In this document: positions 13,936 through 50,649 of the stretch, piece by piece
Numbering within the stretch: position 1 is the stretch's first letter
How the letters are laid out: each line of letters starts with the position of its first letter
NCBI GenBank assembly: GCA_002269645.1
Contig: NIVC01001060.1
Coordinates: forward strand, 1-64,000
DNA length: 64,000 bases
Source of the DNA: Macrostomum lignano
Taxonomy: Eukaryota
Direction: 5' to 3'
Translations under genes and position numbers: made by a program
Notes under the pieces: generated by a model
Seen by the model: only the letters and a program-made list of their open reading frames with translations
Databases searched by the model: none
What the model was told of the DNA's origin: nothing

Positions 13936-14056
13936 AATAATCGCAATAACTTACGTATCCTAAATAATTTGTGACCATAATTTCTATTCATGATTTTCAC
14001 AATAGAAACATTGACGTTTGAAAATCATAAATCTTGGAAGTATTGACACCGATCGG

Positions 14057-15280: not shown

Positions 15281-15519
15281 TGATGAAGTGAACACATTCA
15301 ATTTGATCGTGCTCGGGCTAGAATATTTACTATAAGAAATTTGATTTAAATCGTCAGTCTAACCACATCAGTAATAACAAACGTCAGCTTAGATTATGAT
15401 TTTATATAAAACTACACCTTGTATACACTGTGATTTGCTATAAAATGAGGCTAATGTTTATTGAAAAGTATCGATACACGAGTACAACGTCTGAACCTAT
15501 CTTAAACATTCGACTAAAC

Positions 15520-15717
15520 CAGGGGTCGGCACCCTTTTTACCTCAAGATAGAAGATAGAATAGGGAAAAGAGGTGGGATGAAGGAGAGGCGAGGAAATAA
15601 CAGAAGAGAGAAGAGAGCTCAGCGAACCCTTGGGCCGGTCGGTTTGCTATTGTAAGGTTTAATAGGACCCGAGGGCCGGATAGAGAGGCTTTGTGGGCCG
15701 AAGTTTTCCGCCTCCTG
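15520..15717. mobile_element. Decayed hAT (Charlie-like) MITE
   Basis: Left end CAGGGGTCGGCACCC, subterminal GGGCCGGA / GTGGGCCG, degenerate right end CCGCCTCCTG. Confidence 0.5.
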
Positions 15718-15964
15718 AAGTAAAAATTCTCTTCAAGACCTCAATCTGACTTGCGTAGTACGCCTTGGAGTGGAGTGGTACTCCTTGCACAAGATTGGTG
15801 GTTATTGTTTCTAGAGTGACGCTCCTTGTGTCCAGAGTGGCATGTTGTGGGATGATGAAAAAGATAAAGAGCGTTGCATTTAATTTAAAACAGAACAGAC
15901 AAATAAAAATTTAATTTAATTTTCAATCGCAATTGCGGGGTTGAAAGAAAAGCAAATTAAGAAA

Positions 15965-16150
15965 GAGCCTGTCAACTTAAGCTCATGAAGTGGAGCCCAA
16001 GTAACCTATTTGCCCGAATGATACGTCATTCTGCTCACAGTGACACTTGGAAGCTAAGTTTGGCAAAAAACAACAAAATTGGACTTGGGATAGAGAACTA
16101 GCAAGGGGATGATAAAAGACACCACTTTATGAACTTAAGTTGACAGGCCC
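15965..16150. mobile_element. MITE with ~23-bp TIRs (PIF/Harbinger-like terminus)
   Basis: GAGCCTGTCAACTTAAGCTCATG ... ATGAACTTAAGTTGACAGGCCC; no TSD recognised. Confidence 0.65.
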
Positions 16151-16514
16151 TTTGAATTTTCTTATGATTTATAATGCCTTGAACTCCGTTAGCCTGCAGA
16201 AGAATGTGAGAGGGGATTACACTTGTCATAATTATTGACCCCTTGTCTGAATTTGTTTTAATAAAATCTAACATAAGTTTTTGTCTGCTTTCCTAGTTAA
16301 ATGTGACATGTTCCATTGCATACTCTAAAATTGATTGCATTCAATAAATTATATAATCACGGTGATTGTTATCATTTTCATGTGCAGTTCGGCCTTTCAT
16401 AATTGTTAAAATATGTTAAAATTGTTTTAAAAAAATAAAAAAAGTATTTATTTAAATTTAGATATTATCTTAGCAAGTGACATAACAAGTTAAGCAGTCC
16501 CAGGTCTCAGGAAG

Positions 16515-16808
16515 TAGGCATGGGAGTACAGGAAGTAGACACGGGAGTACAGGAAGTGGACATAGGAGTACAGGAAGTAGACATGGTGGCACAGGAAGTA
16601 GACAAGGGACCACATGAAGTAGACATGGGGGCACAGGAAGTGGACATGGGAGTAAAGGAAGTGGACATGGGAGTACAGGAAGTAGACATGGGAGTACAGG
16701 AAGTAGACATGGGGGCACAGGAAGTAGACATGGGAGTACAGGAAGTAGACATGGGAGTACAGGAAGTAGACATGGGAGTACAGGAAGTAGACACAGGGGT
16801 ACAGGAAG
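16515..16808. repeat. 21-bp minisatellite (CATGGGAGTACAGGAAGTAGA)n
   Basis: Visible periodicity directly upstream of the SURF1 acceptor. Confidence 0.95.
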
Positions 16809-16854
16809 GTACAAGTTTGCGCGCTCGCAACTGTTAAATTTCTTTTTCTTGCAG

Positions 16855-19513
16855 TCCAGCTTTCATTGTCAACGAGCGGTGCTGCTCCTACAGCCACTTC
16901 GCTGCTTGAGAAATCCGCATTACCCTTTGCTAGAAGCAGCAAGCCAACATGCTTTCAAATACACGACAGTGCAACGCGGCTACTCCAACTCTTACAAAGG
17001 TCGCGATAGCGACGGTCCTCGTAACAAATGGTTTCTAGCATTTCCAGCAATCTGCTTCTGTTTAGGCACCTGGCAGGTTTATCGACGGCAATGGAAATTG
17101 GATTTGATTGAATCGTTGAATAGGAGAACTACTCAACCGCCTGTGATTGTTGATGGCGGCTCGGTGAAGGAGCTGATGGCTAAGTCTTTAGACGACATGG
17201 AGTTCAGACCTGTTAGAATTATAGGCGAATTCGATCACGATGGCGAGGTTCTGATTGGACCGCGGCATCTTATCGATCCGAAATCAAGTGCTGGTGCTGA
17301 CGGTCAGTTTTGATAATAATATATTTCATACTAATTAGTAGCTAGTGAGAGATATAAAGCCAGTATTTTATAGAGTTCTAATTGATTTTTAAAAAGTTTT
17401 ACTGTTTTAGCTAATAGATAAAACACTTATAAGGACAAGATTTGGTGGTTATTGTTCTAGAGTGACGCTCCTTGTGTCAAGAGTTTTAACAAAGTACAAT
17501 AGGTAACACTACATGTATCTGATACGGTAAAAGTTAATATACTAACTAGGATAATTGGTAATACGCTAATTAGAGAATTATGTGTAATGTACTAATAAGG
17601 GTAATAGGTATAATGCACTAATAAGGGTAATAGGTAATACACTAATTAGGGTAATAGATAATTAGAGTAATTAGATAATTAAATAATTAGGTAATTAGGG
17701 TAATAGTTAATACACTAATTAGGGTAATAGATAAACACTAATTAGGGTAGTAGGTAATACACTAATTAGGATAATTAGTAATACACTAATTCGGGTAATA
17801 GGTACTACCACTAATTAGGGTAATAGGAAATATACTATCTGATACAGTAATAGGTAATACACTATCTGATACGGTAATAGGTAATACACTATCTGATACG
17901 GTAATAGGTAATACACTAATTAGGGTAATAGATAATACACTAATCAGGGCCATAGGTAATACACTAATACGGTAATAGATATTTAAAAACACTAATAAAA
18001 CTCTATCATAACACAAACACCTGTGCAGGCGGCAACAGTCTATTCTCTAGCGGAGCCGGGGTTGGCTATCACGTGATCACTCCGTTCCGATTGGCTGATA
18101 GCGGCGAGCGTGTCCTGGTGAATCGCGGCTGGGTACCGGCTAAGCTGGCCGATCCAGCTACCAGGCCGCAATGGCAGCAGAGAGGCCGAGTGGAATTGAT
18201 CGGTTTGGTGAGGCTGACTGAACCGGCTGGATTGGTTGGAGGCTATCTTGTCGGTGAGGAGCTGCTGATGCTGCTGGTCCATGCTTGAATAAATTTAAGA
18301 TACATGTTGGGTGAAGAAGGTGAAGGGAGCATGGAGACAAGGGTCAGAGATGAAGGCAGCATGTTGGGAAGGGTCAGAGATGAAGGCAGCATGTTGGGAA
18401 GGGTCAGCAATGAAGGCAGCATGTTGGTAAGGGCTAGAGATGAAGGGAGCATGTTAAGAAGGGTCAGAGATGAAGGCAGCATGTTGGGAAGGGTCAGAGA
18501 TGAAGGCAGCGTGTTGGGAAGGGTCAGAGATGAAGGCAGCATGTTGGGAAGGGTCAGAGATAAAGGGAGCATGTTGGGAAGGGTCAGAGATGAAGGCAGC
18601 GTGTTGGGAAGGGTCAGAGATGAAGGCAGCGTGTTGGGAAGGGTCAGAGATGAAGGCAGCATGTTGGGAAGGGTCAGAGATAAAGGGAGCATGTTGGGAA
18701 GGGTCAGAGATAAAGGGAGCATGTTGGGAAGGGTCAGAGATGAAGGCAGCGTGTTGGGAAGGGTCAGAGATGAAGGCAGCATGTTGGGAAGGGTCAGAGA
18801 TAAAGGGAGCATGTTGGGAAGGGTCAGAGATGAAGGCAGCGTGTTGGGAAGGGTCAGAGATGAAGGCAGCGTGTTGGGAAGGGTCAGAGATGAAGGCAGC
18901 GTGTTGGGAAGGGTCAGAGATGAAGGCAGCATGTTGGGAAGGGTCAGAGATAAAGGGAGCATGTTGGGAAGGGTCAGAGATGAAGGCAGCATGTTGGGAA
19001 GGGTCAGAGATAAAGGGAGCATGTTGGGAAGGGTCAGAGATAAAGGCAGCGTGTTGGGAAGGGTCAGAGATGAAGGCAGCGTGTTGGGAAGGGTCAGAGA
19101 TGAAGCCAGCATATTGGGAAGGGTCAGAGATGAAGGGAGCATATTGGGAAGGGTCAGAGATGAAGGCAGAATGTTGGGAAGGGTCAGAGATGAAGGGAGC
19201 ATGCCTTGAATCGCCCGCAGACGCCCGCAGCCCGGCCAACAGCGGCGCTGTCGGGCCTCAGTCTCGGAGCGCTCGCCGCGGCGTCACCTGCCGCATACGC
19301 CGCGATGTCGAGGCTCTGAGCGGCGAGCTCAACACCCTGCCATTCTTTGTTGACGCCTGCGCTTCTGGCGTGGATTCTAGCGAATCTGCTGGCACTTTTC
19401 CTATTGGCGGGCAGACTAGACTGAGCTTGCGTAACGAGCACCTGTCCTATATTGTTACCTGGTATTCTCTGGGCGCGCTGCTGCTGGTGTTCTGGGCTAT
19501 GCGAATTCGATGA
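16855..19513 (+). CDS. SURF1: SURF1 cytochrome c oxidase assembly factor, 3 exons; no genomic start ATG found
   Basis: Exons 16855-17302, 18029-18253, 19221-19513 join in frame; motifs FCLGTWQVYRRQWK, EFRPVRIIGEFDH, LVNRGWVP, PIGGQTRLSLRNEHLSYIVTWYSL. Confidence 0.95.
17560..17995. repeat. ~20-bp minisatellite (CTAATTAGGGTAATAGGTAATACA-type), SURF1 intron 1
   Basis: Visible periodicity. Confidence 0.85.
18335..19203. repeat. 30-bp minisatellite (ATGTTGGGAAGGGTCAGAGATGAAGGCAGC)n, SURF1 intron 2
   Basis: Exact 30-bp phase, ~29 units. Confidence 0.97.
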
Positions 19514-19689
19514 TGGAAGATACATCATAATCTGTGTACTATACATATGCTCTCAGAATTATTTTAGTACTTTATTGACCTATTAAATATTTCATGAAAA
19601 TTATTGTGCTTTTTTAAATAGGCTTCTTACATGGTTTTTCGTTCTTGACTATTTATTTTTCTTTGTTTTAGACATGCTGGGCCCATGCT

Positions 19690-20400
19690 AGAGTTGCTGG
19701 GCCCGCCTCCCAGATCCCCAGTTGCTGAGCCAGCCTCCTAGATCCTCCGTTGCCGGGCCAGCAGCTCCCCAGAGTGTCAGTTGCTGGGCCAGCCTCCCAG
19801 ATCCTCAGTTGCTGGGCCAGCCTCCCAGATTGTCAGTTGCTAGGCCAGCCTCCTAGATTGTCAGTTGCTAGGCCAGCCTCCCAGATCCTCAGTTGCTGGG
19901 CCAGCCTCCCAGATTGTCAGTTACTGGGCCAGCCTCCTAGATTGTCAGTTGCTAGGCCAGCCTCCCAGATCCTCAGTTGCTGGGCCAGCCTCCCAGATAG
20001 TCAGTTACTGGGCCAGCCTCCTAGATCCTCAGTTGCTGGGCCAGCCTCTCAGATCCTCAGTTGCTGGGCCCGCCTCCCAGATCCCCAGTTGCTGAGCCAG
20101 CAGCTTCCCAGAGTGTCAGTTGCTGGGCCAGCCTCCCAGATTGTCAGTTGCTGGGCCAGCCTCCTAGATTGTCAGTTGCTAGGCCAGCCTCCCAGATCCT
20201 CAGTTGCTGGGCCAGCCTCCCAGATTGTCAGTTACTGGGCCAGCCTCCTAAAGTGTCAGTTGCTGGGCCAGCCTCCCAGATCCTCAGTTGCTCGGCCAGC
20301 CTCCCAGATTGTCAGTTGCTGGGCCAGCCTCCTAGATTGTCAGTTGCTAGGCCAGCCTCCCAGATCCTCAGTTGCTGGGCCAGCCTCCCAGATCCCCAGT
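19690..20400. repeat. ~28-30-bp minisatellite (CAGTTGCTGGGCCAGCCTCCCAGAT(TGT/CCT))n in the SURF1-GTF2H2 spacer
   Basis: Visible periodicity. Confidence 0.93.
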
Positions 20401-20474
20401 GAATCATATTGCCAGTCAGTCAAGCAGGCACAGCCCCATGCTTATGCATGCCAAGAGTTTGAACAGCAAACAGC

Positions 20475-22711
20475 ATGGCAAACTACGGATTCGCAAAGCC
20501 GTCTGCGCGACCCACAGCGGGCACCAGCGGCTACCGGCTTCAGGACGAGGATGCGGCCGCGCTCTCTGGCGGCGGCTTTCGCTGGGAGTCGCAGTTCGAG
20601 CGCTCCTGGGAGGCCCTGGCTGAGGATGAGGAGGGTCGCCTGGCTGGGGCTGTTGGGCGTCTGGAGCAGGTGGGTGAATTGTTATTGGGCTCATTGGACT
20701 TATTTAGTTAGCTAGTCAGTCAGTCAGTCAGTCAGACAGTCAGTCAGTCAGTCAGTCAGTCAGTCAGTCAGACAGTCAGTCAGTCAGACAGTCAGTCAGT
20801 CAGTCAGTCAGTCAGTCAGTCAATCAGTCAGTCAATCAGTCAGTCAGTCAGTCAGTCAGTCAGTCAGTCAGTCAGTATCGAACCCCAAACCCCGCAGGCC
20901 CGCAAGCGCCGGCACCGTCTCGCAGCGGCAGCCCTGCTACCCGGCGGCGGTGGCCGGGCCAGCAAGCTGGGCATGATGCGGCACCTGCTGCTGTGCCTGG
21001 ACTGCTCAGAGACCATGGGCTTGGCCGATCTCAAACCCTGCCGTTTAGCCGCCTGCCTATCCGCAATGCGCAACTTCGTGTCCGGATTCTTCGATCAGAA
21101 TCCCATCGGACAGCTGGGCGTACTGCTGACCAGACGGAAGCTGGCCGAGAGAGTGACCGAGCTCACTGGCAATCCCAGGCGACATTTGGACGCGCTAAAA
21201 GATTTGGCTCAGGCCGGCTCGGGCAAAACCGCCCGTCCCGAAGGGGAGGCGTCATTTCAGAACCTGCTGGAGATGGCCTACGACACGCTGGGCCCCCTGC
21301 CAGGCCACGCCTGCAAAGAGGTTCTCGTGCTGGTGTCAGCCTTGAGCACCTGCGATCCGGGAGATATCGGTGCGACCATTAGCAAACTGGCCAAGGCTAG
21401 GATCAGGTGTTCGGTGAGTGAATCATTTCTGTCTGCCTTTTTTTCTTTTATTGTTACTGTTTTTCAAGTCCTAGATCTGTACCCTTCCTACCCTCCTTTC
21501 CCTCTACCCGCTTTCCTCTAATTACCCTCCTTCCCCTCTACCCGCTTTCCCCTCTCTACCCGCCTTGCCCTCTCTACCTGCTTTCCCCTCTACCCGCTTT
21601 CCCCTCTACCCGCTTTCCCCTCTACCCGCTTTCCTCTCTCTACCCGCCTTCCCCTGTCTACCCACCTTCCCCTCTCCACCCGCTTTCCGCTCTACCTGAT
21701 TTCCGCTCTCTCTCGCGTCTCCGCTTCCCTTTCTCTCATTTTACCCTCCCCCCCTTAGATCTCTCCCCTCTATCCTCACTCTCGTCTATCCTTTCTCTAC
21801 CCTCTTTACCCTCTTTCTAATTACTTTCTACCTGATTTCCTCTCTCTCTCTCTCGCGTCCCCGCTTCCCTTTCTCTCATTTTACCCTCCCCCCCCTTAGA
21901 TCTCTCCCCTCTATCCTCACTCTCGTCTATCCTTTGTCTACCCTCTTTACCCTCTTTCTACTTTCTCCCAACGCTTTCCTTCCTAGCCTCTCTCCATCTC
22001 TCTGTCTCTGTTCCGCCATGATGCGTCAAGGGCAAAGTGCAAGCTCTAGGGAACATTGTTTTACCTTCTAAACCTTGCCAATTGGCGTCCCTTTCCCATA
22101 AATTGCCCAATTTACAGGTAATATCTCTGTCAGCGGATATTCGCGTATTGCGCAAACTCGCCCAGGCCACTGGTGGCACCTACTCTGTGCCGCTAGACGC
22201 TGTCCATCTGTCCGACATCATGTCCAGCTTCCTGCCGCCGCCGGCCAGCGCTCCCGATCCCGCTCTGATCAAAATGGGCTTCCCCTACTCGGCTGGGCAG
22301 GATGGCCAGGAGCAGCCGAGATCCAAGCAGGATGTCATCCGCATTTGCGCCTGTCACGGCACCGTACTATCAGCCGGGGCCACCGCTCACGCCTGCCCCC
22401 AGTGCGCCTGTCTTTACTGCGAGCTGCCGGTTGATTGTCGGATTTGCGGATTAAGTTTGGCCAGCGCCGCTCACCTGGCCAGATCCTATCAGCACCTGTT
22501 CCCGTTGAAGGCATTCGCCGAGGTCACCTTGGCGGCCAGTACGGGCTGTTGCGGATGTGGCGATAGACTAGGCGCTAACACGGAAGCCTACCAGTGCAGC
22601 GACTGTCGGTCTCATTATTGTATCGATTGCGATCGGCTGTTGCACGACTCTTTGCACTCTTGCCCAGTTTGTTTGCAGACTTTATCGGTTAAAACTACTA
22701 TCGCTACTTAG
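20475..22711 (+). CDS. GTF2H2: TFIIH p44 subunit (SSL1/GTF2H2), 3 exons
   Basis: Exons 20475 (or 20544)-20669, 20898-21413, 22118-22711 join in frame; RWESQFERSWEAL, LGMMRHL, FFDQNPIGQLG, HLARSYQHLFPL, C-terminal Cys-rich finger. Confidence 0.96.
20712..20875. repeat. (TCAG)n microsatellite, GTF2H2 intron 1
   Basis: Visible. Confidence 0.95.
21480..22010. repeat. C/T-rich minisatellite (CTCTACCCGCTTTCCC-type) plus a ~125-bp duplication, GTF2H2 intron 2
   Basis: Visible. Confidence 0.85.
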
Positions 22712-23236
22712 TAGTATAAAAGAATAATATTTGTGCGCTAACAAAACTTTTGTACCTGAGCCAGTAAGTAACTTGCTTGATAAAGATTGAGAACACCGGG
22801 AGTAAAGTAGATAAGTAGTCTTTATCTTTATTCAACACATTGGTTCACAGTGAGAGGTCCAGTGGTACATGCATTAGTCACACGTCAAGCATTTAAAACT
22901 TTGTTTGCTCTAATAATACACAATACAATAACTGCCTAATCGATGCAAAAGTATTTCGTACGTTGTGACAGGTGTTTTTTTACTTTATTAACTCTCTTCT
23001 GTGCCTTATATTTGTTTATTTTCATAAGTAGCATTCAAAGGAATACTTTCGGCTTTTTATATTGTCTAATACAATTAGGTCTACCGCTGTAGTCTCAGTT
23101 ATTCTGTTAAAACGCTTAATATTTAGTATATAGGACTATCAGCTTTGCCCCCCTCGGGGGTAACTTACGCTGACAACATTAGAACTGAAATTTGTCATTT
23201 TTGTCATCTAAAATCATTAAGATCAACCGCTACTAC

Positions 23237-23455
23237 GGCGGTTGTAGCCTAGTGGTTATTAAAGCGTCGGATTCATGACTAGGTCCCGGGGGTTCGATTC
23301 TCGACCCACTCACAACAATTTGTGTCCTTGAGCAAGACACATTGACTCTGCATTGCTTCAGTTGCTTCAATTGCTTCAGCTTTAAAATGGGTGCCCCCCA
23401 GTCCTTGGAGTGGAGCAATAACTACGGCTGAGCTGTCGGTTGTACATCTGGCTAT
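23237..23455 (+). mobile_element. tRNA-derived SINE with a CORE-like central domain
   Basis: A box TAGCCTAGTGGTTA, B box GGTTCGATTCTC, then GTGTCCTTGAGCAAGACAC and TAAAATGGGTGCC; homologous to copies at 34577-34841 and 35172-35290. Confidence 0.85.
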
Positions 23456-23536
23456 TAGGTCAGGTGTAATTAATTACCATGTGTTTCTAATATATTTCAA
23501 CTCCATCTATTTTTCAGTGTCAACTCTACAACCGCA

Positions 23537-24436
23537 ATGGCAGCCACTTTAGACATTCGTTTGAAGCGTATTAACAAAACCTACACCGATGGCGACACAA
23601 TCTCCGGCTATGCCGTGATTCGTTGCAAACAAGACTGCGGTCACAATGGTCTCACATTGAATCTGACTGGCACAGTGAGCATGCAGCTTAGCTCAAAAAA
23701 TGTCGGAGTATTCGAAGCATTCTATAACAGTATCAAGCCGATTCAACTGACCGGAGCCACACTAGAACTAGCTAAGCCTGGCAAATTCACCACCGGATTA
23801 ACAGAAATCCCATTTGAAATACCGTTCAAATCCAAGGGTAACAAAACACTGTATGAGACATACCACGGAGTGTTCATTAACATTCAGTACGTGCTTCAGT
23901 TGGACTTGAAACGCTCTCTATTGAACAAAGATCTCAGCAAAACTTGCGAATTCTTAGTCGAATACAATCCAAAGAATTCTGGCCAACCGAGCTCGCAGAC
24001 GCCAGTAACTTTCGCCATCAGCCCGGACAGTGTAGTCAATGTTCAGAACAAGGCCAGTCTACCGAAATTTCGCGTCACCGGCCAACTCACATCGAGTCAC
24101 ATTAGTATTTCTGAGCCACTGAGTGGCGAGCTAGTCATTGAGCAGTGCGCTACTCGGATTAAAAGTGTAGAACTGCAGCTGGTACGCGTAGAGACCTGCG
24201 GCTGTCTGGAAGGCTACGCTAAAGAGACTACTGAGATACAGAATATCCAAGTGGCTGATGGAGACGCTCCCAGAGGGATTAAAATCCCTCTGCACATGGT
24301 GCTGCCGCGTCTGTTCACCTGTCCGAGCGTTTCGGCTACCAATTTCCGAATCGAATTCGAAGTCAACATTGTTGTCGTGTTTCAAGACGACTATTTGGTG
24401 TCTGAAAATATTCATATTCGTGTTAGTAGATTCTGA
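23537..24436 (+). CDS. VPS26C: Retriever subunit VPS26C (DSCR3), intronless, 299 aa
   Basis: TLDIRLKRINKTY, YETYHGVFINIQY, SVELQLVRVETCGCLEGYAKETTEIQNIQVADGD, LPRLFTCP; TTTTCAG acceptor ending at 23517. Confidence 0.96.
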   Translation: MAATLDIRLKRINKTYTDGDTISGYAVIRCKQDCGHNGLTLNLTGTVSMQLSSKNVGVFEAFYNSIKPIQLTGATLELAKPGKFTTGLTEIPFEIPFKSKGNKTLYETYHGVFINIQYVLQLDLKRSLLNKDLSKTCEFLVEYNPKNSGQPSSQTPVTFAISPDSVVNVQNKASLPKFRVTGQLTSSHISISEPLSGELVIEQCATRIKSVELQLVRVETCGCLEGYAKETTEIQNIQVADGDAPRGIKIPLHMVLPRLFTCPSVSATNFRIEFEVNIVVVFQDDYLVSENIHIRVSRF

Positions 24437-24574
24437 TCTGTTGAAGTTGATGATTTAAAACAATTCCTAATTTAAAAGCGATGGTTCTGTAAACGTCTAT
24501 GTAAAAAGGCTGGCTATTGAATTAGATAACGAAGTAGACGGTGTCCGTTGAATGCCATTTTTGTCTAATTAACA

Positions 24575-24699
24575 GACACTTAGACAGGCAGACAGAAAGG
24601 CGGGCAGACAGACTGTCAGACTGACAAACATACTGACAGACAGACACGCAGACAGACAGGCAGGCAGGCAGACAGACAGGCAGACAGGCAGACAAAGGC

Positions 24700-24736
<37 letters not shown>

Positions 24737-24849
24737 GGCAGACAAAGGCAGGCAGACAGACAGACAGACAGACAGACAGACAGGCAGACAAAGGCAGGCA
24801 GATAGGCAGGCAGACAGACAGGCAGACAGAAAGGCAGACAAAGGCAGGC

Positions 24850-24886
<37 letters not shown>

Positions 24887-24903
24887 GGCAGACAAAGGCA
24901 GGC

Positions 24904-24936
<33 letters not shown>

Positions 24937-25103
24937 GGCAGACAAAGGCAGGCAGATAGGCAGGCAGACAGACAGGCAGACAGAAAGGCAGACAAAGGCA
25001 GGCAGACAGATAGGCAGACAGACAGACAGGCAGACAGACAGGCTGACAGAAAGGCAGGCAGATAGATAGGCAGGCAGACAGACAGGCAGACAGAAAGGCA
25101 GGC

Positions 25104-25136
<33 letters not shown>

Positions 25137-25264
25137 CTAAGACAGACTGTCAGACTGACAAACATACTGACAGACAGGCAGACAGACAGACAGGCTGACA
25201 GAAAGGCAGGCAGATAGATAGGCAGGCAGACAGACAGGCAGACAGAAAGGCAGGCAGACAGACC

Positions 25265-25300
<36 letters not shown>

Positions 25301-25495
25301 CTAAGACAGACTGTCAGACTGACAAACATACTGACAGACAGACAGGCAGAAAGGCAGGCAGACAGACAGATAGACAGGCAGGCAGGCAGACAGAAATGCA
25401 GGCAGACAGAAAGGCAGCCAGACAGACCGACAGATAGATGGACTGACTGACTGACTGACACTCAGATAGACGGATACACAGACAGACAGACAGCC
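24575..25495. repeat. (GACA/GGCA)n compound microsatellite with internal block duplications
   Basis: Visible. Confidence 0.95.
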
Positions 25496-26204
25496 TCTAA
25501 CATTCAGCATTCACAGGACAATTTCATTCGTGTTAACTACAATCAACGCACCTTCCTAAAATGCTTCCTAATTTTCATAGAACTTGGAAACATAAAAACA
25601 CGCAGAAAACGTTATATTGCCATTCGCAGTTATTTTGCGACAACACGTTAAGATTTGTTGGTTTCTGCCATAGACAGTAGCGCTCAACAAAACAAATGTG
25701 ATTAAAGTATATGTGCTAATTTATAGGAAAGCTCGTTAAGTCCTATCTTAAGCAAATTTAATCCTGATTAATTCAATCCTAGTACTGTGAGAAAAAACTA
25801 TCAAATTTTGTTGTTTAATAGCACCAGAGTATTAAAAATTGCTTAGCTTTTATCACATATATCTACAGATTGATGGACACTAAAAAATTGCTAATCATCC
25901 TGTATACTTACAGTAGTCAGTCGCTAATTTGCATAATTTTACAGTAGGACTGTGCTAAAAATATTTTACTAAAGTACTCGTAATCCCGAGTCCTAATTCA
26001 ATAAATCATTATGTAATAGTGTTCATCATCTATAGCAGTACATGTATCTTTGATTATTGATTTTTTTACATTTATACGCTCGTAAAAGTTGGATTTTCTA
26101 TTTTTACATTTACCTTTGTGCTAGGATTTAGATTGATTGTCATCAACTGATATCATATATTAGAGATGTTGTTAAGTTCATGTATTTGCAACTGTTTTAT
26201 GGAA

Positions 26205-26480
26205 GACAGACAGGCTGACAGACAGACAGAAAGACAGGCTGACAGACAGACAGGCTGACAGACAGACAGGCGGAAAGACGACACTAAGACAGGCAGACAG
26301 ACAGACACTAAGACAGACAGACAGACAGACACACTAAGACACTAAGACAGACAGACAGACAGACACACTAAGACACTAAGACAGACACACTAAGGCACTA
26401 AGACAGACAGACAGACATACTAAGACACTAAGACAGACAGACAGACAGACACTAAGACAGACAGACAAACAGACAGAAAG
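26205..26480. repeat. (GACA)n / ACACTAAG compound repeat
   Basis: Visible. Confidence 0.9.
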
Positions 26481-26556
26481 CGTGATACTAATACTGATAT
26501 TTTCAATCACATACTACTAATATACATCCATAATTCCGCCGCTGCCGTCAGCAGAG

Positions 26557-26571
26557 ATGAATCGCCAGTAG
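26557..26571 (+). promoter_or_regulatory. uORF1 (M-N-R-Q-stop) of the ATF4-like leader
   Basis: ATG AAT CGC CAG TAG. Confidence 0.65.
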
Positions 26572-26646
26572 CCCCAGCTACACCGCTGCGCCCCGAAAGG
26601 CCAGACAGTCAAAGAAACGCAACGAAAACCCAACACAGACGCCAAC

Positions 26647-26823
26647 ATGGCCACCTTTACCTGCCAGTCAACTCAGTGCTCAAAGTACAACAAGACTACT
26701 GCTACTAATACTACTACTACTACCAAGCATAATCACTTCTGCAAGCATGACTGCCAACATGGCTTCAATGGTGACTCCGCCAATGACGGATGCCAGTGGT
26801 GGAGATTTCTCTTCATATCTTAA
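26647..26823 (+). promoter_or_regulatory. uORF2 (58 aa), overlapping the main ORF out of frame by 77 nt
   Basis: GCCAACATGG context; open to TAA at 26821-26823; spans main-frame ATGs at 26747, 26759, 26768 and 26783. Confidence 0.7.
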
Positions 26824-27947
26824 TCTCTGTCAGGATGCTCGTCACGCTGAGCAAGGCGTTGAGCTGCTCCTGTCATCCGCATCAGTTTGGCTAACTGATT
26901 CGCTGTTGCCAAAGTCCGGCCCAGCCTCCCATCGTACGGACGATGATGATGAAGTGTCATCGGTGCTTGACGGCTTCCCTAGCAACAGTGCCGTTGCTGA
27001 TGACGCCGAGATGGATAGTATTTTCCCATTTCTAACGCCAGAATCGGCAGATACTGCTGGTGCTTCGGCTGTTCGCGACTGTCTTCTCGACTTGGACGGT
27101 GTCGACTTTGATGTCGATGAGTTGATGCCGCCGGATCGACCGGTTTTCGACGATGGTGATGATGACGACGCAGATGAAGATTTGGTGATGTCATCGTCAT
27201 TGACGTCGTCTGTCGATCAGACGCCACCGCCGCAGGTGCTGCCTCGCAGAGGCAGAGGCAAAGGCGGCGGTTTCGGCAGGAAGTCGAAATCTTCTAATAT
27301 GAGGACTAAAGGCGAGGCTAATCGAGAGGCTGCCTATCGGTTAGTTGCTAACTGATGCCCACTCTGTGTATTGCTGACTCCCCCTCTCGGACCCCCTCTG
27401 ACCTCTCGGGCCTCCCCCTCCCTGATCGCTCCCTCCCGGACCTCCCCCTCTCTGACATCCCCCTCGCCGACCTCTCCCTCTCGGACCTCCCCCTCTCTGA
27501 CCTACCCCTCTCTGATTACCCCTTCTCCGACCTCCCCCTCACTGACGTTCCCCTCTCTGACTCCCCCTCTTTAGCCTCCCCCTGATCTCTTCCTCTGTGA
27601 ACTCCCCTCTCTGATATTTCCTTTATCAAGTCTACACGCCCCAACAGTCGCACACACAACGCCAAGCCCTGCCCCCCGCCCTCAGATACAGAGCAAAGCA
27701 ACGCCAATCCAACTCGCTGGCCAAGTCCCGACACTCGCAACTGGTTGCCGACAATCAACGTCTGGAAGCTGAAGTGGCATCGGCCGAGAGCCAACTGCAG
27801 TTCCTGCTGCACCTGTGCCGCAGGAGGCCAACGCCAGCTAAGAAGCGACTGCAGCTAAGAATTTTAGAGGCCGATGAAGATTGCGATCCACCGCAGCTGG
27901 GTTCGAAACCCAAACTTATCACCATGGTTTTTAAACACCGGGTTTGA
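26747..27947 (+). CDS. ATF4: ATF4/ATF5-like bZIP transcription factor, 2 exons, ~284 aa
   Basis: Exons 26747-27339 and 27686-27947 join to give KGEANREAAYRYRAKQR..QLVADNQRLEAEVASAESQLQFLLHL (compare ATF4 EQNKTAATRYRQKKR..IQYLKDL); acidic N-terminal region. Confidence 0.75.
27365..27620. repeat. 15-bp C-rich minisatellite (CCTCCCCCTCTCTGA-type), bZIP intron
   Basis: Visible. Confidence 0.85.
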
Positions 27948-28254
27948 ACTGGTGCGAAATCGGTGGTCTAGTTTTTGTGCTTCTGTTCGTCCTTTAATGT
28001 TCCCTCGCCGACAGACATTGATCAAGGGATTCTGTTTCTTTTTTTAAATGATAAACTAACCTATCATTATAGTTTTATTAGTTTCCTGTTTGATAACTTT
28101 TGTCGATCTTTTCGTATATATGCTTCTAAATCTTTGTTGTGTGAGCTATTGATAAAAAAGTGTACTTTCCTTTCTATCCACTTTATTAAATCGTTTTTTT
28201 AATAGTTCTTAGAATCGCCCCTAAATCAATCCTGAGAAAGCAATTAAATCGTTA

Positions 28255-29390
28255 TGAGAATCGCACCAATCTACCCGGAGAATCACGCCAATCTACCCCG
28301 AGAATCACCCCAATCTACCCTGAGAATCACCCCAATCTACCCTGAGAATCACCCCAATCTACTCTGAGAATCACCTCAATTTACCCTGAGAATCAACCCC
28401 AATCTACCCTGAGAATCACCCCCAATCTACCCTGAGAATCGCCCCAATCTACCCTGAGAATCACCCCAATCTACTCTGAGAATCGCCTCAATTTACCCTG
28501 AGAATCAACCCCAATCTACCCTGAGAATCAACCCCAATCTACCCTGAGAATCACCCCAATCTACTCTGAGAATCACCCCAATCTACCCTGAGAATCACCC
28601 CAATCTACCCTGAGAATCACTCCAATCTACCCTGAGAATCACCCCCAATCTACCCTGAGAATCGCCCCAATCTACCCTGAGAATCAACCCCAATCTACCC
28701 TGAGAATCGCCTCAATCTACCCTGAGAATCAACCCAAATCTACCCTGAGAATCACCCCAATCTACCCTGAGAATCACCCCCAATCTACCCTGAGAATCAC
28801 CCCAATCTACTCTGAGAATCACCCCAATCTACCCTGAGAATCGCCCCAATCTACCATGAGAATCGCTCATTTGTCTACCTGAGAATCACCTGAATCTACC
28901 GGGAGAATCGCCCTAATCGACCCGGAGAATCGCTCATTTGTCTACCTGAGAATCGCTCATTTGTCTACCTGAGAATCGCTCATTTGTCTACCCTGAGAAT
29001 CGCCCCAATCTACCCTGAGAATCGCCCCAATCTACCCTGAGAATCGCTCATTTGTCTACCTGAGAATCGCCCCAATCTACCCTGAGAATCGCTAATTTGT
29101 CTACCTGAGAATCGCCCCAATCTACCCTGAGAATCGCTCATTTGTCTACCTGAGAATCGCTCCAATCTACCCTGAGAATCGCCCCAATCTACCCGGAGAA
29201 TCGCTCATTTGTCTACCTGAGAATCACCTGAATCTACCGGGAGAATCGCCCTAATCGACCCGGAGAATCGCCCCAATCTACCCTGAGAATCGCTTATTTG
29301 TCTACCTGAGAATCGCCCCAATCTACCCGGAGAATCGCTCATTTGTCAACCTGAGAATCACCCCAATCTACTCTGAGAATCGCCCCAATC
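28255..29390. repeat. 22-23-bp minisatellite (CCCTGAGAATCACCCCAATCTA)n
   Basis: Visible periodicity. Confidence 0.95.
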
Positions 29391-29834
29391 TCTTAAGGTA
29401 GCTCTCTTTTGAGCTATCTTTTTAGGTAGCTCATTAGCCTACCTAAAAACCGATTTTAAATCAATCCTGAGAATTGCTCCGAAACCGTTCTTAACATCGC
29501 TTATCAATTCATAATCGAGAATAGTTTTGTTATAACTGCATCTGATGTACGTCACGATCTATTTGCACTGTTTTCTTCGCAACGTATGCTTATTTATTAA
29601 CAAGGTCTTTTGAGTAATAACCACATTTTGGTTATTGTCAACATCTAATTGATTAGACAAATATATATATATCTCCCTCTTCATACAAAATCGGTTACGA
29701 GTATTGTTTATAAGTGGTGCAATTGATTTACCAGCTCTGGGCTCCACCTGACCCGAACTAAATGTAAATGACATGTTGTTTATCCACTGGTAGTGCTGCT
29801 TTTTCAGTTACTATTCATTGTGACCGTGTCAGTC

Positions 29835-31922
29835 GGGGTGCCAAATGGAGTGTCATATGGAGTGTCAAACGGGGTGCCAAATGGAGTGCCAAATGAAGTG
29901 CCAAATGGAATGTCAAACGGGGTATCAAATGGAGTGTCAAATGGAATGTCAAACGGGGTGTCAAATGGAGTGCCAAATAGAGTGCCAAATTGGGTGTCAA
30001 ATGGAGTGCCAAATAGAATTTCAAACGGGGTGTCAAATGGAGTGCCAAATGGAATGTCAAACTGGGTGTCAAATGGAGTGCCAAATGCGGTGTCAAATGG
30101 AGTGTCAAATGGAGTGCCAAATGGAATGTCAAACTGTGTGTCAAATGGAGTGCCAAATGAAGTGCCAAATAGAGTGCCAAATGGAATGTCAAACTGTGTG
30201 TCAAATGGAGTGCCAAATGGGGTGTCAAATGGAGTGTCAAATGGAGTGCCAAATGGAGTGCCAAATAGAGTGCCAAATAGAGTGCTAAATGGAATGTCAA
30301 ACTGGGTGTCAAATGGAGTGCCAAATGGGGTGTCAAATGGAGTGCCAAATGGAGTGCCAAACGGGGTGCCAAATAGAGTGCCAAATGGAATGTCAAATGG
30401 AGTGCCAAACGGAGTGCCAAATGGAGTGCCAAATGAAGTGCCAAATAGAGTGCCAAATGGAATGTCAAACTGGGTGTCAAATGGAGTGCCAAATGGAATG
30501 TCAAACTGGGTGTCAAATGGCGTGCCAAATGGAATGTCAAATGGAGTGCCAAATAGAATGTCAAACGGGGTGCCAAATGGAGTGCCAAATGGATTGCCAA
30601 ATGGGGTGTCAAATGGAATGTCAAATGGAGTGCCAAATGGAGTGCCAAATGGGGTGTCAAATGGAATGTCAAATGGAGTGCCAAATGGAATGTCAAACGG
30701 GGTGCCAAATGCAGTGCCAAATGGATTGCCAAATGGGGTGTCAAATGGAATGTCAAATGGGGTGTCAAATGGAGTGTCAAATGGATTGCCAAATGGAGTG
30801 CCAAATGGGGTGTCAAATGGAATGTCAAATGGAGTGCCAAATGGAATGCCAAACGGGGTGCCAAATGGAGTGCCAAATGGATTGCCAAATGGGGTGTCAA
30901 ATGGAATGTCAAATGGGGTGTCAAATGGAGTGTCAAATGGAGTGCCAAATGGAGTGCCAAATAGAGTGCCAAATGGAATGTCAAACTGGGTGTCAAATGG
31001 AGTGCCAAATGGGGTGTCAAATGGAGTGCCAAATGGAGTGCCAAACGGGGTGCCAAATAGATTGCCAAATGTAATGTCAAACTGGGTGTCAAATGGAGTG
31101 CCAAATGGGGTGTCAAATGGAGTGCCAAATGGAGTGCCAAACGGAGTGCCAAATGGAGTGCCAAATGAAGTGCCAAATAGAGTGCCAAATGGAATGTCAA
31201 ACTGGGTGTCAAATGGAGTGCCAAATGGAATGTCAAACTGGGTGTCAAATGGCGTGCCAAATGGAATGTCAAATGGAGTGCCAAATGGAATGTCAAATGG
31301 AGTGCCAAACGGAGTGCCAAATGGAGTGCCAAATGAAGTGCCAAATAGAGTGCCAAATGGAATGTCAAACTGGGTGTCAAATGGAGTGCCAAATGGAATG
31401 TCAAACTGGGTGTCAAATGGCGTGCCAAATGGAATGTCAAATGGAGTGCCAAATGGAATGTCAAATGGAGTGCCAAACGGAGTGCCAAATGGAGTGCCAA
31501 ATGAAGTGCCAAATAGAGTGCCAAATGGAATGTCAAACTGGGTGTCAAATGGAGTGCCAAATGGAATGTCAAACTGGGTGTCAAATGGCGTGCCAAATGG
31601 AGTGCCAAATGGAGTGCCAAATGGGGTGTCAAATGGAGTGCCAAATGGATTGCCAAATGGGGTGTCAAATGGAATGTCAAACGGGGTGTCAAATGGAGTG
31701 CCAAATGGAGTGCCAAATGGGGTGTCAAATGGAGTGCCAAATAGATTGCCAAATGGGGTGTCAAATGGAATGTCAAATGGGGTGTCAAATGGAGTGTCAA
31801 ACGGAGTGTTAAATGAAGTGCCAAATGGAGTGCCAAATGGGGTGTCAAATGGAGTGTCAAACGGAGTGTCAAATGAAGTGCCAAATGGAGTGCCAAATTG
31901 GGTGTCAAATGGAGTGTCAAAC
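29835..31922. repeat. 12-bp minisatellite (GTG(C/T)CAAATGGA)n, ~2.1 kb
   Basis: Uninterrupted 12-bp phase with higher-order blocks. Confidence 0.97.
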
Positions 31923-32139
31923 AGTATGCGCGCTGCTGTCATTTGATGCCAATTGACACCATGCATATCAGGCGGGCATGTAGGTTGCAGCTGAGAAGCT
32001 AAAAGCATACTTCTGCCAACTCTATCAATTCCCACCTATGCTTCTAGGCACATTCTCAAGACAAAAATTGTCAGTCAGCAGCCTCAGAAAATGAATCGCT
32101 TCTAAAGCGAAATAAGCAATATTTATGATCTGAGCTGCT

Positions 32140-32290: not shown

Positions 32291-32483
32291 TTTTTGCAGA
32301 CGGGGTAAGGCCTGAAGCGTAAAGCCTCTCAGTCCTTCTTGCTGTATTTTAACCAATCGGAGGTAAGACGCAACTGTAAACCTTTATAATGTATAAAATG
32401 GATTGCTGTGGTCTCAAACTTGTTAACTTCAATCCTTGACCTGCAACGCCTATAGAAAGCTGAAGAAAGTTTGTCAATATATC

Positions 32484-33233
32484 ATGTCGACATTTAAACT
32501 AATGTTGTTGCTTCTTCAAAGCGTTCTTAACAGCCTGTCGCTGCCAGCCCTGGCCCAGCTGTGCCCCTCGCCGTTCAGCCTTGAGGCCGGGAAGTGCATT
32601 TTCGTGAACAAGGTGAGAAGCTTCAGCTGGTGCGAGGCCAACCGGCAGTGCGCCATGATCGGAGGCGAGCTGCTCAACTCGTACAGCTCTCTGCAGCTGC
32701 TCAGCAGCATGCCGAGTTTCGCCTGCAGCTGCTACATTTGGTTTGGAGTGACCGACTTGGCTGATGAGAGATTCTCCAGCAGATCGGGCTGGCAATTGGT
32801 CAAGGGTAACGGCATCATGCCGCTGAATGACTCGCTATGGGCCACTTTATCCGAGCCAAACGAGAACACCTTTGAGAACTGCATCTTCCATGCATCCCAT
32901 GGCAAAATCCACAACAATCCATGCGCAGCTGAGCGCGGGTTCGCTTGCGAGTGGACTCCGAGTGCCGCTCAGCCGCTGCCAACTGCTGCCTCGTGGAAGC
33001 TGGCTCCGTTCAAGCGGACCAGCTACCACGCCAGCACTGAGTACTGCTACTCTGACCTGACCAATGTTCACTCCGAGCTGGCTTGTGTCATGTCAGCTTT
33101 CAATTCTGGCAACTGCAGACACGTGCTGTACAACAGCAAGCTGAGAGCCTGCCGCCTGCTGCTGTTCACCGACGCTCAGGTGGAGGCGGAGATCGAGACG
33201 AGCGCCGACTGGGTCAAGTTCAGCGTGTATTGA
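32484..33233 (+). CDS. Secreted C-type lectin with a C-terminal PAN/apple-like domain, intronless, 249 aa
   Basis: Signal peptide; SWCEANRQC, YIWFGVTD, EPN motif, ENC..NNPC..FACE; C-terminal C..SELAC..C.HVLYN...C pattern. Confidence 0.85.
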   Translation: MSTFKLMLLLLQSVLNSLSLPALAQLCPSPFSLEAGKCIFVNKVRSFSWCEANRQCAMIGGELLNSYSSLQLLSSMPSFACSCYIWFGVTDLADERFSSRSGWQLVKGNGIMPLNDSLWATLSEPNENTFENCIFHASHGKIHNNPCAAERGFACEWTPSAAQPLPTAASWKLAPFKRTSYHASTEYCYSDLTNVHSELACVMSAFNSGNCRHVLYNSKLRACRLLLFTDAQVEAEIETSADWVKFSVY

Positions 33234-50636: not shown

Positions 50637-50649
50637 GTAAGGAGTCTAC

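What the first reader, a model, noticed from the sequence alone, without database searches (positions are those of the whole stretch)
26557..26823. Vertebrate-style two-uORF delayed-reinitiation leader on an ATF4-like gene
A 4-codon uORF1 is followed 75 nt later by a 58-aa uORF2 in strong context (GCCAACATGG). uORF2 overlaps the main ORF out of frame by 77 nt and covers all four early in-frame ATGs. This is the established architecture that makes ATF4 translation inducible by eIF2-alpha phosphorylation. It supports the orthology call and predicts an integrated stress response switch here. uORF2 fell below the ORF-track cutoff.
Basis: partly seen in the sequence, partly recalled or inferred. 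Interest (0 to 1): 0.7.

Follow-up and report, generated by a model that had tools for sequence, protein, structure and literature searches.

The report
Flatworm ATF4-like gene's two-uORF leader
A stress-type transcription factor gene of the flatworm Macrostomum lignano is preceded by the same pair of small upstream reading frames that makes ATF4 translation stress-inducible in mammals, flies and nematodes; the pattern is real and conserved in related flatworm genes, but it is a new example of a well-known switch, not a new kind.

Summary
The window is Macrostomum lignano contig NIVC01001060.1. uORF1 (MNRQ*) lies at 26557-26571. A 75-nt spacer follows. uORF2 (58 aa, context GCCAACATGG) lies at 26647-26823. 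It overlaps the 284-aa bZIP ORF (ATG 26747) by 77 nt in the -1 frame and covers four in-frame ATGs.

Taken alone, this layout is not beyond chance: 10-29% of shuffled leaders show it. Comparison is what makes it credible. A diverged M. lignano paralog (Mlig020208) has the same design. So do two assembled RNA contigs of related worms that begin with the Macrostomum spliced leader. Each has a 2-codon uORF1 right after the spliced-leader junction, a 111-119-nt spacer, and a 60-69-codon uORF2 in context GCCAAGATGG overlapping the CDS in the -1 frame.

A profile of the family's bZIP region hits human ATF4 best among solved structures (E 2e-5). The basic region carries ATF4's AAxRYR signature. No homology outside the bZIP was found.

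Two things remain untested: whether both uORFs sit in this gene's own mature mRNA, and whether eIF2-alpha phosphorylation induces translation. The same design is already proven in Drosophila crc and reported for C. elegans atf-4, so "vertebrate-style" is a misnomer. Verdict: new member of a known kind, with modest interest.

The parts
26536..26551 (+). Putative 3' splice (spliced-leader trans-splice) acceptor: pyrimidine-rich tract TCCGCCGCTGCCGTC followed by AG at 26550-26551. The exon would start at 26552, 5 nt before the uORF1 ATG.
   Evidence: It is the first of eight pyrimidine-rich AG candidates in the leader (73% pyrimidines, CAG); 26666-26667 scores higher. It does not match the published YTNCAG motif exactly (PMC8629364). 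In related mRNAs the SL junction lies 2 nt before uORF1. This is an inference and is not shown for this gene.
26557..26571 (+). uORF1: ATG AAT CGC CAG TAG (MNRQ*), context GCAGAGATGA.
   Evidence: It is identical in the homeolog L002. The counterparts in the paralog group are 2-codon uORFs (MD*, ME*).
26572..26646 (+). Spacer of 75 nt between uORF1 and uORF2, free of ATG.
   Evidence: It is 74 nt in the homeolog and 111-119 nt in the paralog group. No significant RNA structure was found.
26647..26823 (+). uORF2: 58 codons plus stop, strong context GCCAACATGG, -1 frame relative to the main ORF, overlapping it by 77 nt.
   Evidence: In the homeolog the two substitutions before the CDS are synonymous in the uORF2 frame, and the stop changes TAA to TAG at the same position. 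Equivalent uORFs of 60-69 codons in context GCCAAGATGG occur in L003, L006 and L007.
26747..27339 (+). Main CDS exon 1. It has four in-frame ATGs at 26747, 26759, 26768 and 26783. It encodes an acidic N-terminal region and the first part of the bZIP basic region (from 27314).
   Evidence: The translation equals PAA72802.1.
27340..27685 (+). Intron of 346 nt (GTTAGT...CCTCAG), made largely of a C/T-rich tandem repeat. It splits the basic region between AAYR and YR.
   Evidence: It is 11% diverged from the homeolog with many gaps.
27686..27947 (+). Main CDS exon 2: the rest of the basic region, the leucine zipper (Pfam bZIP_2 match ends about 27788), the C-terminal tail and the TGA stop.
   Evidence: bZIP_2, E 1.3e-5, 25.6 bits against a cut-off of 22.3.

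Best explanation
This is the 5' leader of one of two paralogous ATF4-like bZIP genes of Macrostomum lignano. It most likely works as an ATF4/GCN4-type delayed-reinitiation switch.

Proposed mechanism:
1. [quoted passage not shown] That end is probably created by spliced-leader trans-splicing at 26551|26552.
2. After uORF1 the 40S subunit stays on the mRNA and resumes scanning.
3. When eIF2 ternary complex is plentiful, the subunit is recharged within the 75-nt spacer. It then initiates at the strong uORF2 AUG.
4. uORF2 runs out of frame past all four candidate start codons of the bZIP ORF, so the factor is not made.
5. When eIF2-alpha is phosphorylated, recharging is slower. Subunits pass the uORF2 AUG and initiate 100-136 nt further on, at the main AUGs.

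Shown: the sequence architecture, its conservation across homeologs, a paralog and other species, the presence of both uORFs in mature SL-mRNAs of the related genes, and the ATF4-type bZIP.

Inferred: the 5' end of this gene's own mRNA, translation of the uORFs, and the stress response itself.
For: 1. The architecture is exact. It closely matches human ATF4, which has a 4-codon uORF1, a 60-codon uORF2 in the -1 frame, and several in-frame AUGs inside the overlap (PMC11058473).
2. The M. lignano paralog Mlig020208 is only 40% identical, and only within the bZIP. It has uORF1 ATGGAATAG, a 118-nt spacer, and a 69-codon uORF2 in context GCCAAGATGG overlapping the CDS by 86 nt in the -1 frame.
3. 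Logan RNA contigs encoding relatives P0004 and P0006 begin with the last 16-24 nt of the published Macrostomum SL (..TGCGAAGACTCAATTTATTGCATG, PMC8629364). They continue CCATGGATTAA or CCATGGAGTAG, then a uORF2 of 60-64 codons overlapping the CDS. So in that lineage both uORFs are in mature mRNA.
4. The probability that the uORF2 frame stays open up to the main ATG is 0.08-0.20 per leader in shuffles. Across four diverged lineages the product is about 3e-4.
5. Between the two M. lignano homeologs the leader differs at 4 of 194 positions (2.1%), like the CDS (2.3%). The intron differs at 11.4% (Fisher p 5e-5) and the 3' flank at about 5%. uORF1 is identical, and the uORF2 peptide and stop position are preserved.
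6. A profile of the family's bZIP hits ATF4 (1ci6) at E 2.3e-5. The next hits are NFIL3 at 0.024, GCN4 at 0.057 and C/EBP at 0.3. hhalign against human ATF4 gives 93% probability over the bZIP.
7. The same design is functionally validated in Drosophila, where uORF1 and uORF2 start-codon mutants have opposite effects (PMC4433282). C. elegans atf-4 also has two uORFs, whose deletion raises reporter translation (PMC8857226).
Against: - There is no transcript evidence for this gene's 5' end.
- The proposed acceptor (CGTCAG) does not match the published trans-splice motif YTNCAG.
- A more pyrimidine-rich acceptor (CCTTTACCTGCCAG|) lies at 26666-26667, inside uORF2.
- The architecture alone arises in 10-29% of shuffled leaders.
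- The homeolog comparison is weak. Neutral divergence is only about 4-5%, the leader is not significantly more conserved than the 3' flank (p 0.13), and the intron is a repeat that aligns poorly.
- With the single sequence, C/EBP-beta scores slightly better than ATF4 (E 0.015 against 0.14).
- No homology to ATF4 was found outside the bZIP, and no canonical ATF4 was reached by an exhaustive phmmer search.
- No ortholog of this particular paralog was found in other species.
Confidence: 0.62

Rival explanations
1. The mature mRNA starts downstream of uORF1 or of the uORF2 AUG. For example, SL trans-splicing could use the acceptor at 26666-26667, or an internal transcription start could be used. 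The leader would then not be a two-uORF switch. At most, one overlapping uORF would act as a constitutive damper overcome by leaky scanning. That uORF would be uORF2 itself, or a truncated uORF2 started by the SL's own AUG, which would be in frame at that junction.
For: The AG at 26666-26667 follows the most pyrimidine-rich tract in the leader (80%). Joining there puts the SL's terminal ATG in the uORF2 frame (26668-26647 = 21). About 30-39% of M. lignano genes are trans-spliced (PMC8629364, PMC5730564). No transcript data could be obtained for this gene.
Against: In the two related mRNAs the SL junction is 2 nt upstream of uORF1, so both uORFs are retained. The sequence from 26552 to 26646 is as conserved between the homeologs as the CDS, whereas the 44 nt just upstream are 6.8% diverged. 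uORF1 is identical in both copies.
Confidence: 0.2
2. The arrangement is a chance by-product of an ATG-poor, repeat-flanked leader and has no regulatory role. The gene is a lineage-specific bZIP, not an ATF4 counterpart.
For: Shuffles give the architecture in 10-29% of cases. Part of uORF2 is a low-complexity (ACT)n run that encodes poly-Thr. An exhaustive search found no canonical ATF4 at E <= 1e-3. The N-terminus shows no ATF4 homology.
Against: The same design, frame relation and start contexts recur in a paralog and in two other species, whose proteins are only 30-47% identical overall or 40% within the bZIP. The joint open-frame probability is about 3e-4. ATF4 is the top solved-structure match for the family profile.
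Confidence: 0.1
3. uORF2 encodes a functional 58-aa micropeptide, or acts through a peptide-dependent ribosome stall, and is more than a sequence-independent barrier.
For: All three substitutions in uORF2 between the homeologs preserve the peptide and the stop. The N-terminus MA(T/S)FT..QS is shared with the paralog's uORF2.
Against: Three substitutions is too few to judge. Beyond about 10 residues the four uORF2 peptides are unrelated and differ in length, 58-69 aa. There is no Pfam match. The shared N-terminus can be explained by conservation of the nucleotide context of the start codon.
Confidence: 0.05

Closest known systems
Human/mouse ATF4 5' leader (delayed reinitiation; Vattem & Wek 2004 model, revisited in PMC11058473)
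   Same: Both have a short 5'-proximal uORF: human 4 codons including the stop, here 5. Both have a long last uORF: human 60 codons including the stop, here 59. In both, the long uORF lies in the -1 frame, overlaps the CDS start and covers several in-frame AUGs. In both, the downstream gene is a bZIP with an AAxRYR basic region.
   Different: Here the 5' end is probably made by spliced-leader trans-splicing, and the SL itself ends in AUG. No start-stop uORF0 and no significant stem-loop in the overlap were found. There is no protein similarity outside the bZIP. Function is untested.
Drosophila melanogaster crc (ATF4) leader (PMC4433282)
   Same: It is an invertebrate ATF4 with two uORFs. uORF2 overlaps the CDS out of frame by 125 nt. 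The two uORFs were shown by AUG-to-AUA mutants to have opposite effects.
   Different: The overlap length and spacing differ. The Drosophila mRNA is not trans-spliced. The Drosophila case is experimentally proven and this one is not.
Caenorhabditis elegans atf-4 (formerly atf-5) leader (PMC8857226)
   Same: It has two uORFs in the 5' UTR that confer preferential translation when translation is suppressed. The organism also uses SL trans-splicing.
   Different: From general knowledge, not checked here: nematode SLs carry no AUG. The details of the overlap were not compared here.
Saccharomyces cerevisiae GCN4 leader
   Same: It uses reinitiation after a short permissive uORF, with bypass of inhibitory downstream uORFs when ternary complex is low. 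The GCN4 bZIP is the third-best solved-structure match to the family profile.
   Different: From general knowledge, not checked here: GCN4 has four short uORFs, none overlapping the CDS.
M. lignano paralog BOX15_Mlig020208 and its relatives P0004 and P0006 (unnamed Logan transcripts)
   Same: They share the identical basic region NREAAYRYR.KQR. They share the same leader design, the same -1 frame, and nearly the same uORF2 start context (GCCAAGATGG against GCCAACATGG).
   Different: Their uORF1 is 2 codons, not 4. Their spacer is 111-119 nt, not 75. The Mlig020208 gene is intronless. The proteins are alignable with confidence only in the bZIP.

Membership tests
ATF4/ATF5 subfamily of bZIP transcription factors | A bZIP domain (basic region plus leucine zipper) | tested here: met
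   Pfam bZIP_2 (PF07716) at E 1.3e-5, 25.6 bits against a cut-off of 22.3, covering aa 190-232.
ATF4/ATF5 subfamily of bZIP transcription factors | Basic-region signature N-x2-A-A-x-R-Y-R, with Tyr where most bZIPs have Cys or Ser. That this is diagnostic rests on my own knowledge. | tested here: met
   NREAAYRYRAKQR here against NKTAATRYRQKKR in ATF4 chain 1ci6_A. The motif is invariant in all five family members.
ATF4/ATF5 subfamily of bZIP transcription factors | Closer to ATF4 than to other characterised bZIP families | tested here: inconclusive
   With the family profile, ATF4 scores E 2.3e-5, against NFIL3 at 0.024, GCN4 at 0.057 and C/EBP at 0.3. With the single sequence, C/EBP-beta scores 0.015 against ATF4 at 0.14. 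No phylogeny with a full metazoan bZIP panel could be built. An exhaustive phmmer search reached no canonical ATF4 at E <= 1e-3.
ATF4/ATF5 subfamily of bZIP transcription factors | Homology to ATF4 outside the bZIP (N-terminal motifs, degron) | tested here: not met
   hhalign of the family alignment against human ATF4 aligned only the bZIP (61 columns, probability 93%). N-terminal regions of ATF4 are poorly conserved between phyla, so this weakens the orthology claim without excluding it.
ATF4-type delayed-reinitiation leader | A short, 5'-proximal uORF (2-4 sense codons) | tested here: met
   uORF1 at 26557-26571, MNRQ*.
ATF4-type delayed-reinitiation leader | A last uORF in good initiation context that overlaps the main CDS out of frame | tested here: met
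   uORF2 at 26647-26823, context GCCAACATGG, 77-nt overlap, -1 frame.
ATF4-type delayed-reinitiation leader | Both uORFs are present in the mature mRNA | not testable with these tools
   No transcript of this gene could be retrieved. The feature is met for the related genes P0004 and P0006, whose contigs begin with the SL.
ATF4-type delayed-reinitiation leader | Evolutionary conservation of the arrangement | tested here: met
   It is conserved in the homeolog, in the paralog Mlig020208 and in two other species' mRNAs. The joint open-frame probability is about 3e-4. Orthologs of this particular paralog in congeners were not available.
ATF4-type delayed-reinitiation leader | Translation induced by eIF2-alpha phosphorylation, with uORF1 acting positively and the last uORF negatively | not testable with these tools
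   This needs reporters or ribosome profiling.
SL trans-spliced mRNAs of Macrostomum | [quoted passage not shown] | tested here: not met
   There is no exact YTNCAG in 26397-26556. The best candidate is CGTCAG at 26546-26551, after a 73% pyrimidine tract. In PMC8629364 the motif was found at only 9551 of 21754 sites, so its absence is not decisive.

The most novel reading that the evidence does not exclude
In Macrostomum the spliced leader may itself be part of the stress switch. uORF1 sits 2-5 nt behind the SL junction, so the whole sequence 5' of uORF1 is the generic SL. The SL ends in its own weak-context AUG. In this gene that AUG would open a 3-codon ORF, AUG CAG AGA UGA, whose stop overlaps the uORF1 AUG. 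The SL would then supply both an extra 'uORF0' and the 5' context that lets ribosomes resume scanning after uORF1. Two paralogous ATF4-like genes would have kept this SL-dependent three-uORF design.
Probability: 0.15. Interest if true: 0.55.

Novelty: new member of a known kind. Interest (0 to 1): 0.35.

Why it matters
The finding extends the ATF4 two-uORF design to a flatworm, a member of the Lophotrochozoa. I found no description of it in the searched literature: no paper holds both 'Macrostomum' and 'ATF4', and none of the listed top hits of a flatworm/ATF4/uORF search contains 'ATF4' or 'uORF'. It shows that two diverged paralogs both keep the design, which argues for an ancient and strongly selected mechanism. 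M. lignano has working transgenesis (PMC5730564), so the leader could serve as an in-vivo reporter of the integrated stress response in a regenerating, stem-cell-rich animal. It would also allow a test of how SL trans-splicing, and an SL that ends in AUG, interacts with reinitiation control. None of this overturns current understanding.

Tried and rejected
- Transcript evidence for this gene. The exact-protein look-up returned only the genome contig. The third copy, P0002, is not on record as DNA. Supplement searches of four M. lignano papers for Mlig009232, Mlig009092, Mlig020208 and ATF4 found nothing: two papers had no supplement text held, and two had no hits.
- A third large-database search with the bZIP profile returned one irrelevant hit, so no named invertebrate ATF4 set could be gathered. 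For that reason no phylogeny was built.
- RNA structure in the leader. Z-scores ranged from -1.6 to +0.7, which is not significant. There were no Rfam hits in 23000-29000.
- The idea that the intronless paralog Mlig020208 is a retrocopy carrying an SL remnant (ATTGATG or ATTGCTG directly before CCATGG). Local alignment to the SL is no better than shuffles, p about 0.24, so I rejected it.
- Nucleotide alignment of this leader with the paralog leaders. They are too diverged to align reliably, apart from the uORF start contexts and an AATCGCC motif. I used it only qualitatively.
- An SL RNA gene in the window: none with up to 3 mismatches.
- N-terminal homology to human ATF4: none detected.

Full report
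**Source and gene model.** The spliced protein encoded at 26747-27339 plus 27686-27947 is 100% identical to NCBI PAA72802.1. [quoted passage not shown] It lies on contig NIVC01001060.1 of assembly GCA_002269645.1, and window coordinates equal contig coordinates. The window is very rich in tandem repeats, with 30 rows of score 400 or more. The gene is flanked by (GACA)n-type arrays on its 5' side and a 22-mer array on its 3' side. It is the last of four same-strand genes: EAF at 14018-15280, Ssl1/TFIIH-p44 at 20973-22711, Vps26 at 23537-24436, and the bZIP gene.

**The observation.**
- uORF1 is at 26557-26571 (MNRQ*).
- The spacer is 75 nt.
- uORF2 is at 26647-26823, 58 aa, in context GCCAACATGG.
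- The main ATG is at 26747, the overlap is 77 nt, and uORF2 is in the -1 frame.
- In-frame ATGs at 26747, 26759, 26768 and 26783 all lie inside uORF2. The second has the same GCCAACATGG context as uORF2.
- No other ATG lies between 26401 and 26557. By eye, the ATG-free stretch reaches back to about 26205.

**Chance.** In dinucleotide-preserving shuffles of the leader, with the CDS kept fixed, a short uORF followed by an overlapping out-of-frame uORF arises in 10-29% of cases. The figure depends on the assumed leader length. Exactly such a pair alone arises in 3-6%. The layout in this one sequence is therefore not statistically remarkable. Its weight must come from what the gene is and from conservation.

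**What the protein is.**
- Pfam finds bZIP_2 just above its threshold.
- The single bZIP sequence matches solved C/EBP-beta (E 0.015) and ATF4 (E 0.14) about equally weakly.
- An exhaustive phmmer search of 1.84 billion representatives found only four proteins at E <= 1e-3. One is a third M. lignano copy (P0002). Two are unnamed proteins (P0004, P0006). The fourth (P0005) is a low-complexity repeat protein and looks spurious.
- A profile search added a second M. lignano gene, BOX15_Mlig020208 (P0007).
- All true members share an invariant basic region, E(A/S)NREAAYRYRxKQR.
- A profile of the five bZIPs hits human ATF4 (1ci6) at E 2.3e-5. That is about 1000-fold better than NFIL3, GCN4, ATF2 or C/EBP.

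I therefore call it 'ATF4-like by its bZIP'. Orthology is plausible but is not demonstrated by a phylogeny.

**Conservation of the leader.** This is the main new evidence.

(a) Homeolog. P0003 (Mlig009092) sits on NIVC01000012.1 and is also preceded by Vps26.
- Its leader has an identical uORF1 and a 74-nt spacer.
- The uORF2 peptide is identical, because both substitutions before the CDS are synonymous in the uORF2 frame.
- The uORF2 stop changes from TAA to TAG at the same position.
- Divergence is 2.1% in the leader and 2.3% in the CDS. It is 6.8% in the 44 nt upstream of the putative acceptor, about 5% in the 3' flank and 11.4% in the intron.
- The copies are too close for this to be strong evidence.

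(b) Paralog. In the Mlig020208 loci (L007, L008) the genomic sequence upstream of the intronless CDS shows the same design.
- uORF1 is ATGGAATAG.
- The spacer is 118 nt in L007. By coordinates it is 114 nt in L008.
- uORF2 has 69 codons in context GCCAAGATGG.
- It overlaps the CDS by 86 nt in the -1 frame.

(c) Other species. The Logan contigs encoding P0004 (three runs) and P0006 (one run) are about 1.1 kb and look like mRNAs. They begin with the last 16-24 nt of the published M. lignano spliced leader, CGGTCTCTTACTGCGAAGACTCAATTTATTGCATG (PMC8629364). The SL is reported to be highly conserved among Macrostomum species (PMC10468722). Directly after the SL these contigs read CCATGGATTAA or CCATGGAGTAG, a 2-codon uORF1. 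After 119 or 111 nt comes a uORF2 in context GCCAAGATGG, of 64 or 60 codons. It overlaps the CDS start by 86 or 77 nt in the -1 frame.

In that lineage, then, both uORFs are in mature trans-spliced mRNA. P0004 and P0007 are only 47% identical. Beyond about 10 residues the uORF2 peptides are unrelated, yet the frame stays open in every case. In shuffles the probability of that is 0.08-0.20 per leader, and the product over four lineages is about 3e-4.

**The 5' end of this gene's mRNA.** This is the weak point.
- About 30-39% of M. lignano genes are SL trans-spliced (PMC8629364, PMC5730564).
- The pyrimidine-rich tract plus CAG at 26536-26551 would place the junction 5 nt before uORF1. That parallels the 2 nt seen in the relatives.
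- It is not an exact YTNCAG site.
- An even more pyrimidine-rich acceptor lies at 26666-26667, inside uORF2. Use of that site would delete both uORF start codons, although the SL's own AUG would then be in the uORF2 frame.
- I could not obtain transcript data.
- If the first site is used, the SL's terminal AUG would open AUG CAG AGA UGA. Its stop overlaps the uORF1 AUG. This would be a possible third, weak-context uORF.

**Mechanism.** By analogy with the mammalian model (PMC11058473) and the tested Drosophila case (PMC4433282), the expected sequence is as follows.
- uORF1 permits reinitiation.
- With abundant ternary complex, ribosomes reinitiate at uORF2 and terminate 77 nt into the CDS, past all candidate starts.
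- With phosphorylated eIF2-alpha they bypass uORF2 and start at 26747 or 26759.
- All functional steps are inferred.

**Comparison and novelty.** The design is well known. It is experimentally validated in mammals and in Drosophila crc, where uORF2 overlaps the CDS by 125 nt. Two regulatory uORFs are also reported for C. elegans atf-4 (PMC8857226). 'Vertebrate-style' is therefore inaccurate, because this is the general metazoan ATF4 design. What is new is modest:
- a flatworm example;
- its retention in two diverged paralogs;
- its placement immediately behind an SL that ends in AUG.

No paper in the library holds both 'Macrostomum' and 'ATF4'. None of the listed top hits of a flatworm/ATF4/uORF search contains 'ATF4' or 'uORF'.

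**Verdict.** The feature is a new member of a known kind, with interest 0.35.

Noticed in passing
L007:3748-4090 and L008:3752-4090 (M. lignano NIVC01000138.1 and NIVC01003015.1): A second M. lignano ATF4-like gene, BOX15_Mlig020208 (268 aa, intronless), carries the same two-uORF leader: uORF1 ME*, then a uORF2 of 69 codons with an 86-nt overlap. No AG directly precedes its CCATGG, although related mRNAs of other species have the SL joined exactly there. The bases before it (ATTGATG or ATTGCTG) resemble the SL's 3' end (ATTGCATG).
   Followed up: partly
L003:59-72, L006:66-79, L007:3787-3800 (approximate): The spacer between uORF1 and uORF2 of the paralog group holds a conserved CGCAC-YYCG-GTGC element, a possible 4-bp hairpin with a tetraloop whose loop bases vary. 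The minimum-free-energy fold shows it only in L007. No equivalent is obvious in the window's gene.
   Followed up: partly
L003:14-79, L006:22-108; predicted at window 26552-26560: The terminal AUG of the spliced leader opens an additional ORF in the mature mRNAs of the relatives. It is 21 or 28 codons long and overlaps uORF1. In the window's gene it would give AUG CAG AGA UGA, with its stop overlapping the uORF1 AUG. Its context is weak (U at -3).
   Followed up: no
window 14018-27947, + strand: Four same-strand genes lie in a row, separated mostly by tandem repeats: EAF, Ssl1/TFIIH p44, Vps26 and the bZIP gene. Vps26 has a perfect TTTTTCAG acceptor 19 nt before its ATG. The Ssl1-Vps26-bZIP order is repeated at the homeologous locus L002. 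This could be a polycistronic, SL-resolved unit.
   Followed up: partly
window 50648-64000: A 13.3-kb tandem array of a 10-mer (ACTCACTGTA, about 1324 copies, 91% matches) runs to the end of the window. It explains the constant GC skew of -0.44 there.
   Followed up: no
window 29793-32035, both strands: 'ORFs' of 700-743 aa open on both strands are translations of a 36/96/168-nt tandem repeat (TGCCAAATGGAGTGTCAAATGGAG...). They are not genes.
   Followed up: partly
window 27340-27685: The single intron of the bZIP gene interrupts the basic region between AAYR and YR. It consists largely of a CCCCTCTC(T/G)GAC-like repeat. The UniProt model of a third M. lignano copy (P0002, A0A1I8H250) lacks the two residues at this junction (its sequence reads AAYRAKQR), probably because of a mis-set splice site.
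   Followed up: no
window 32436-33233 (+) and 38764-39324 (-): These ORFs have a weak C-type lectin match (E 6e-4, below the Pfam cut-off) and leucine-rich repeat matches (LRR_6, E 2e-19). They are probably exons of further genes.
   Followed up: no
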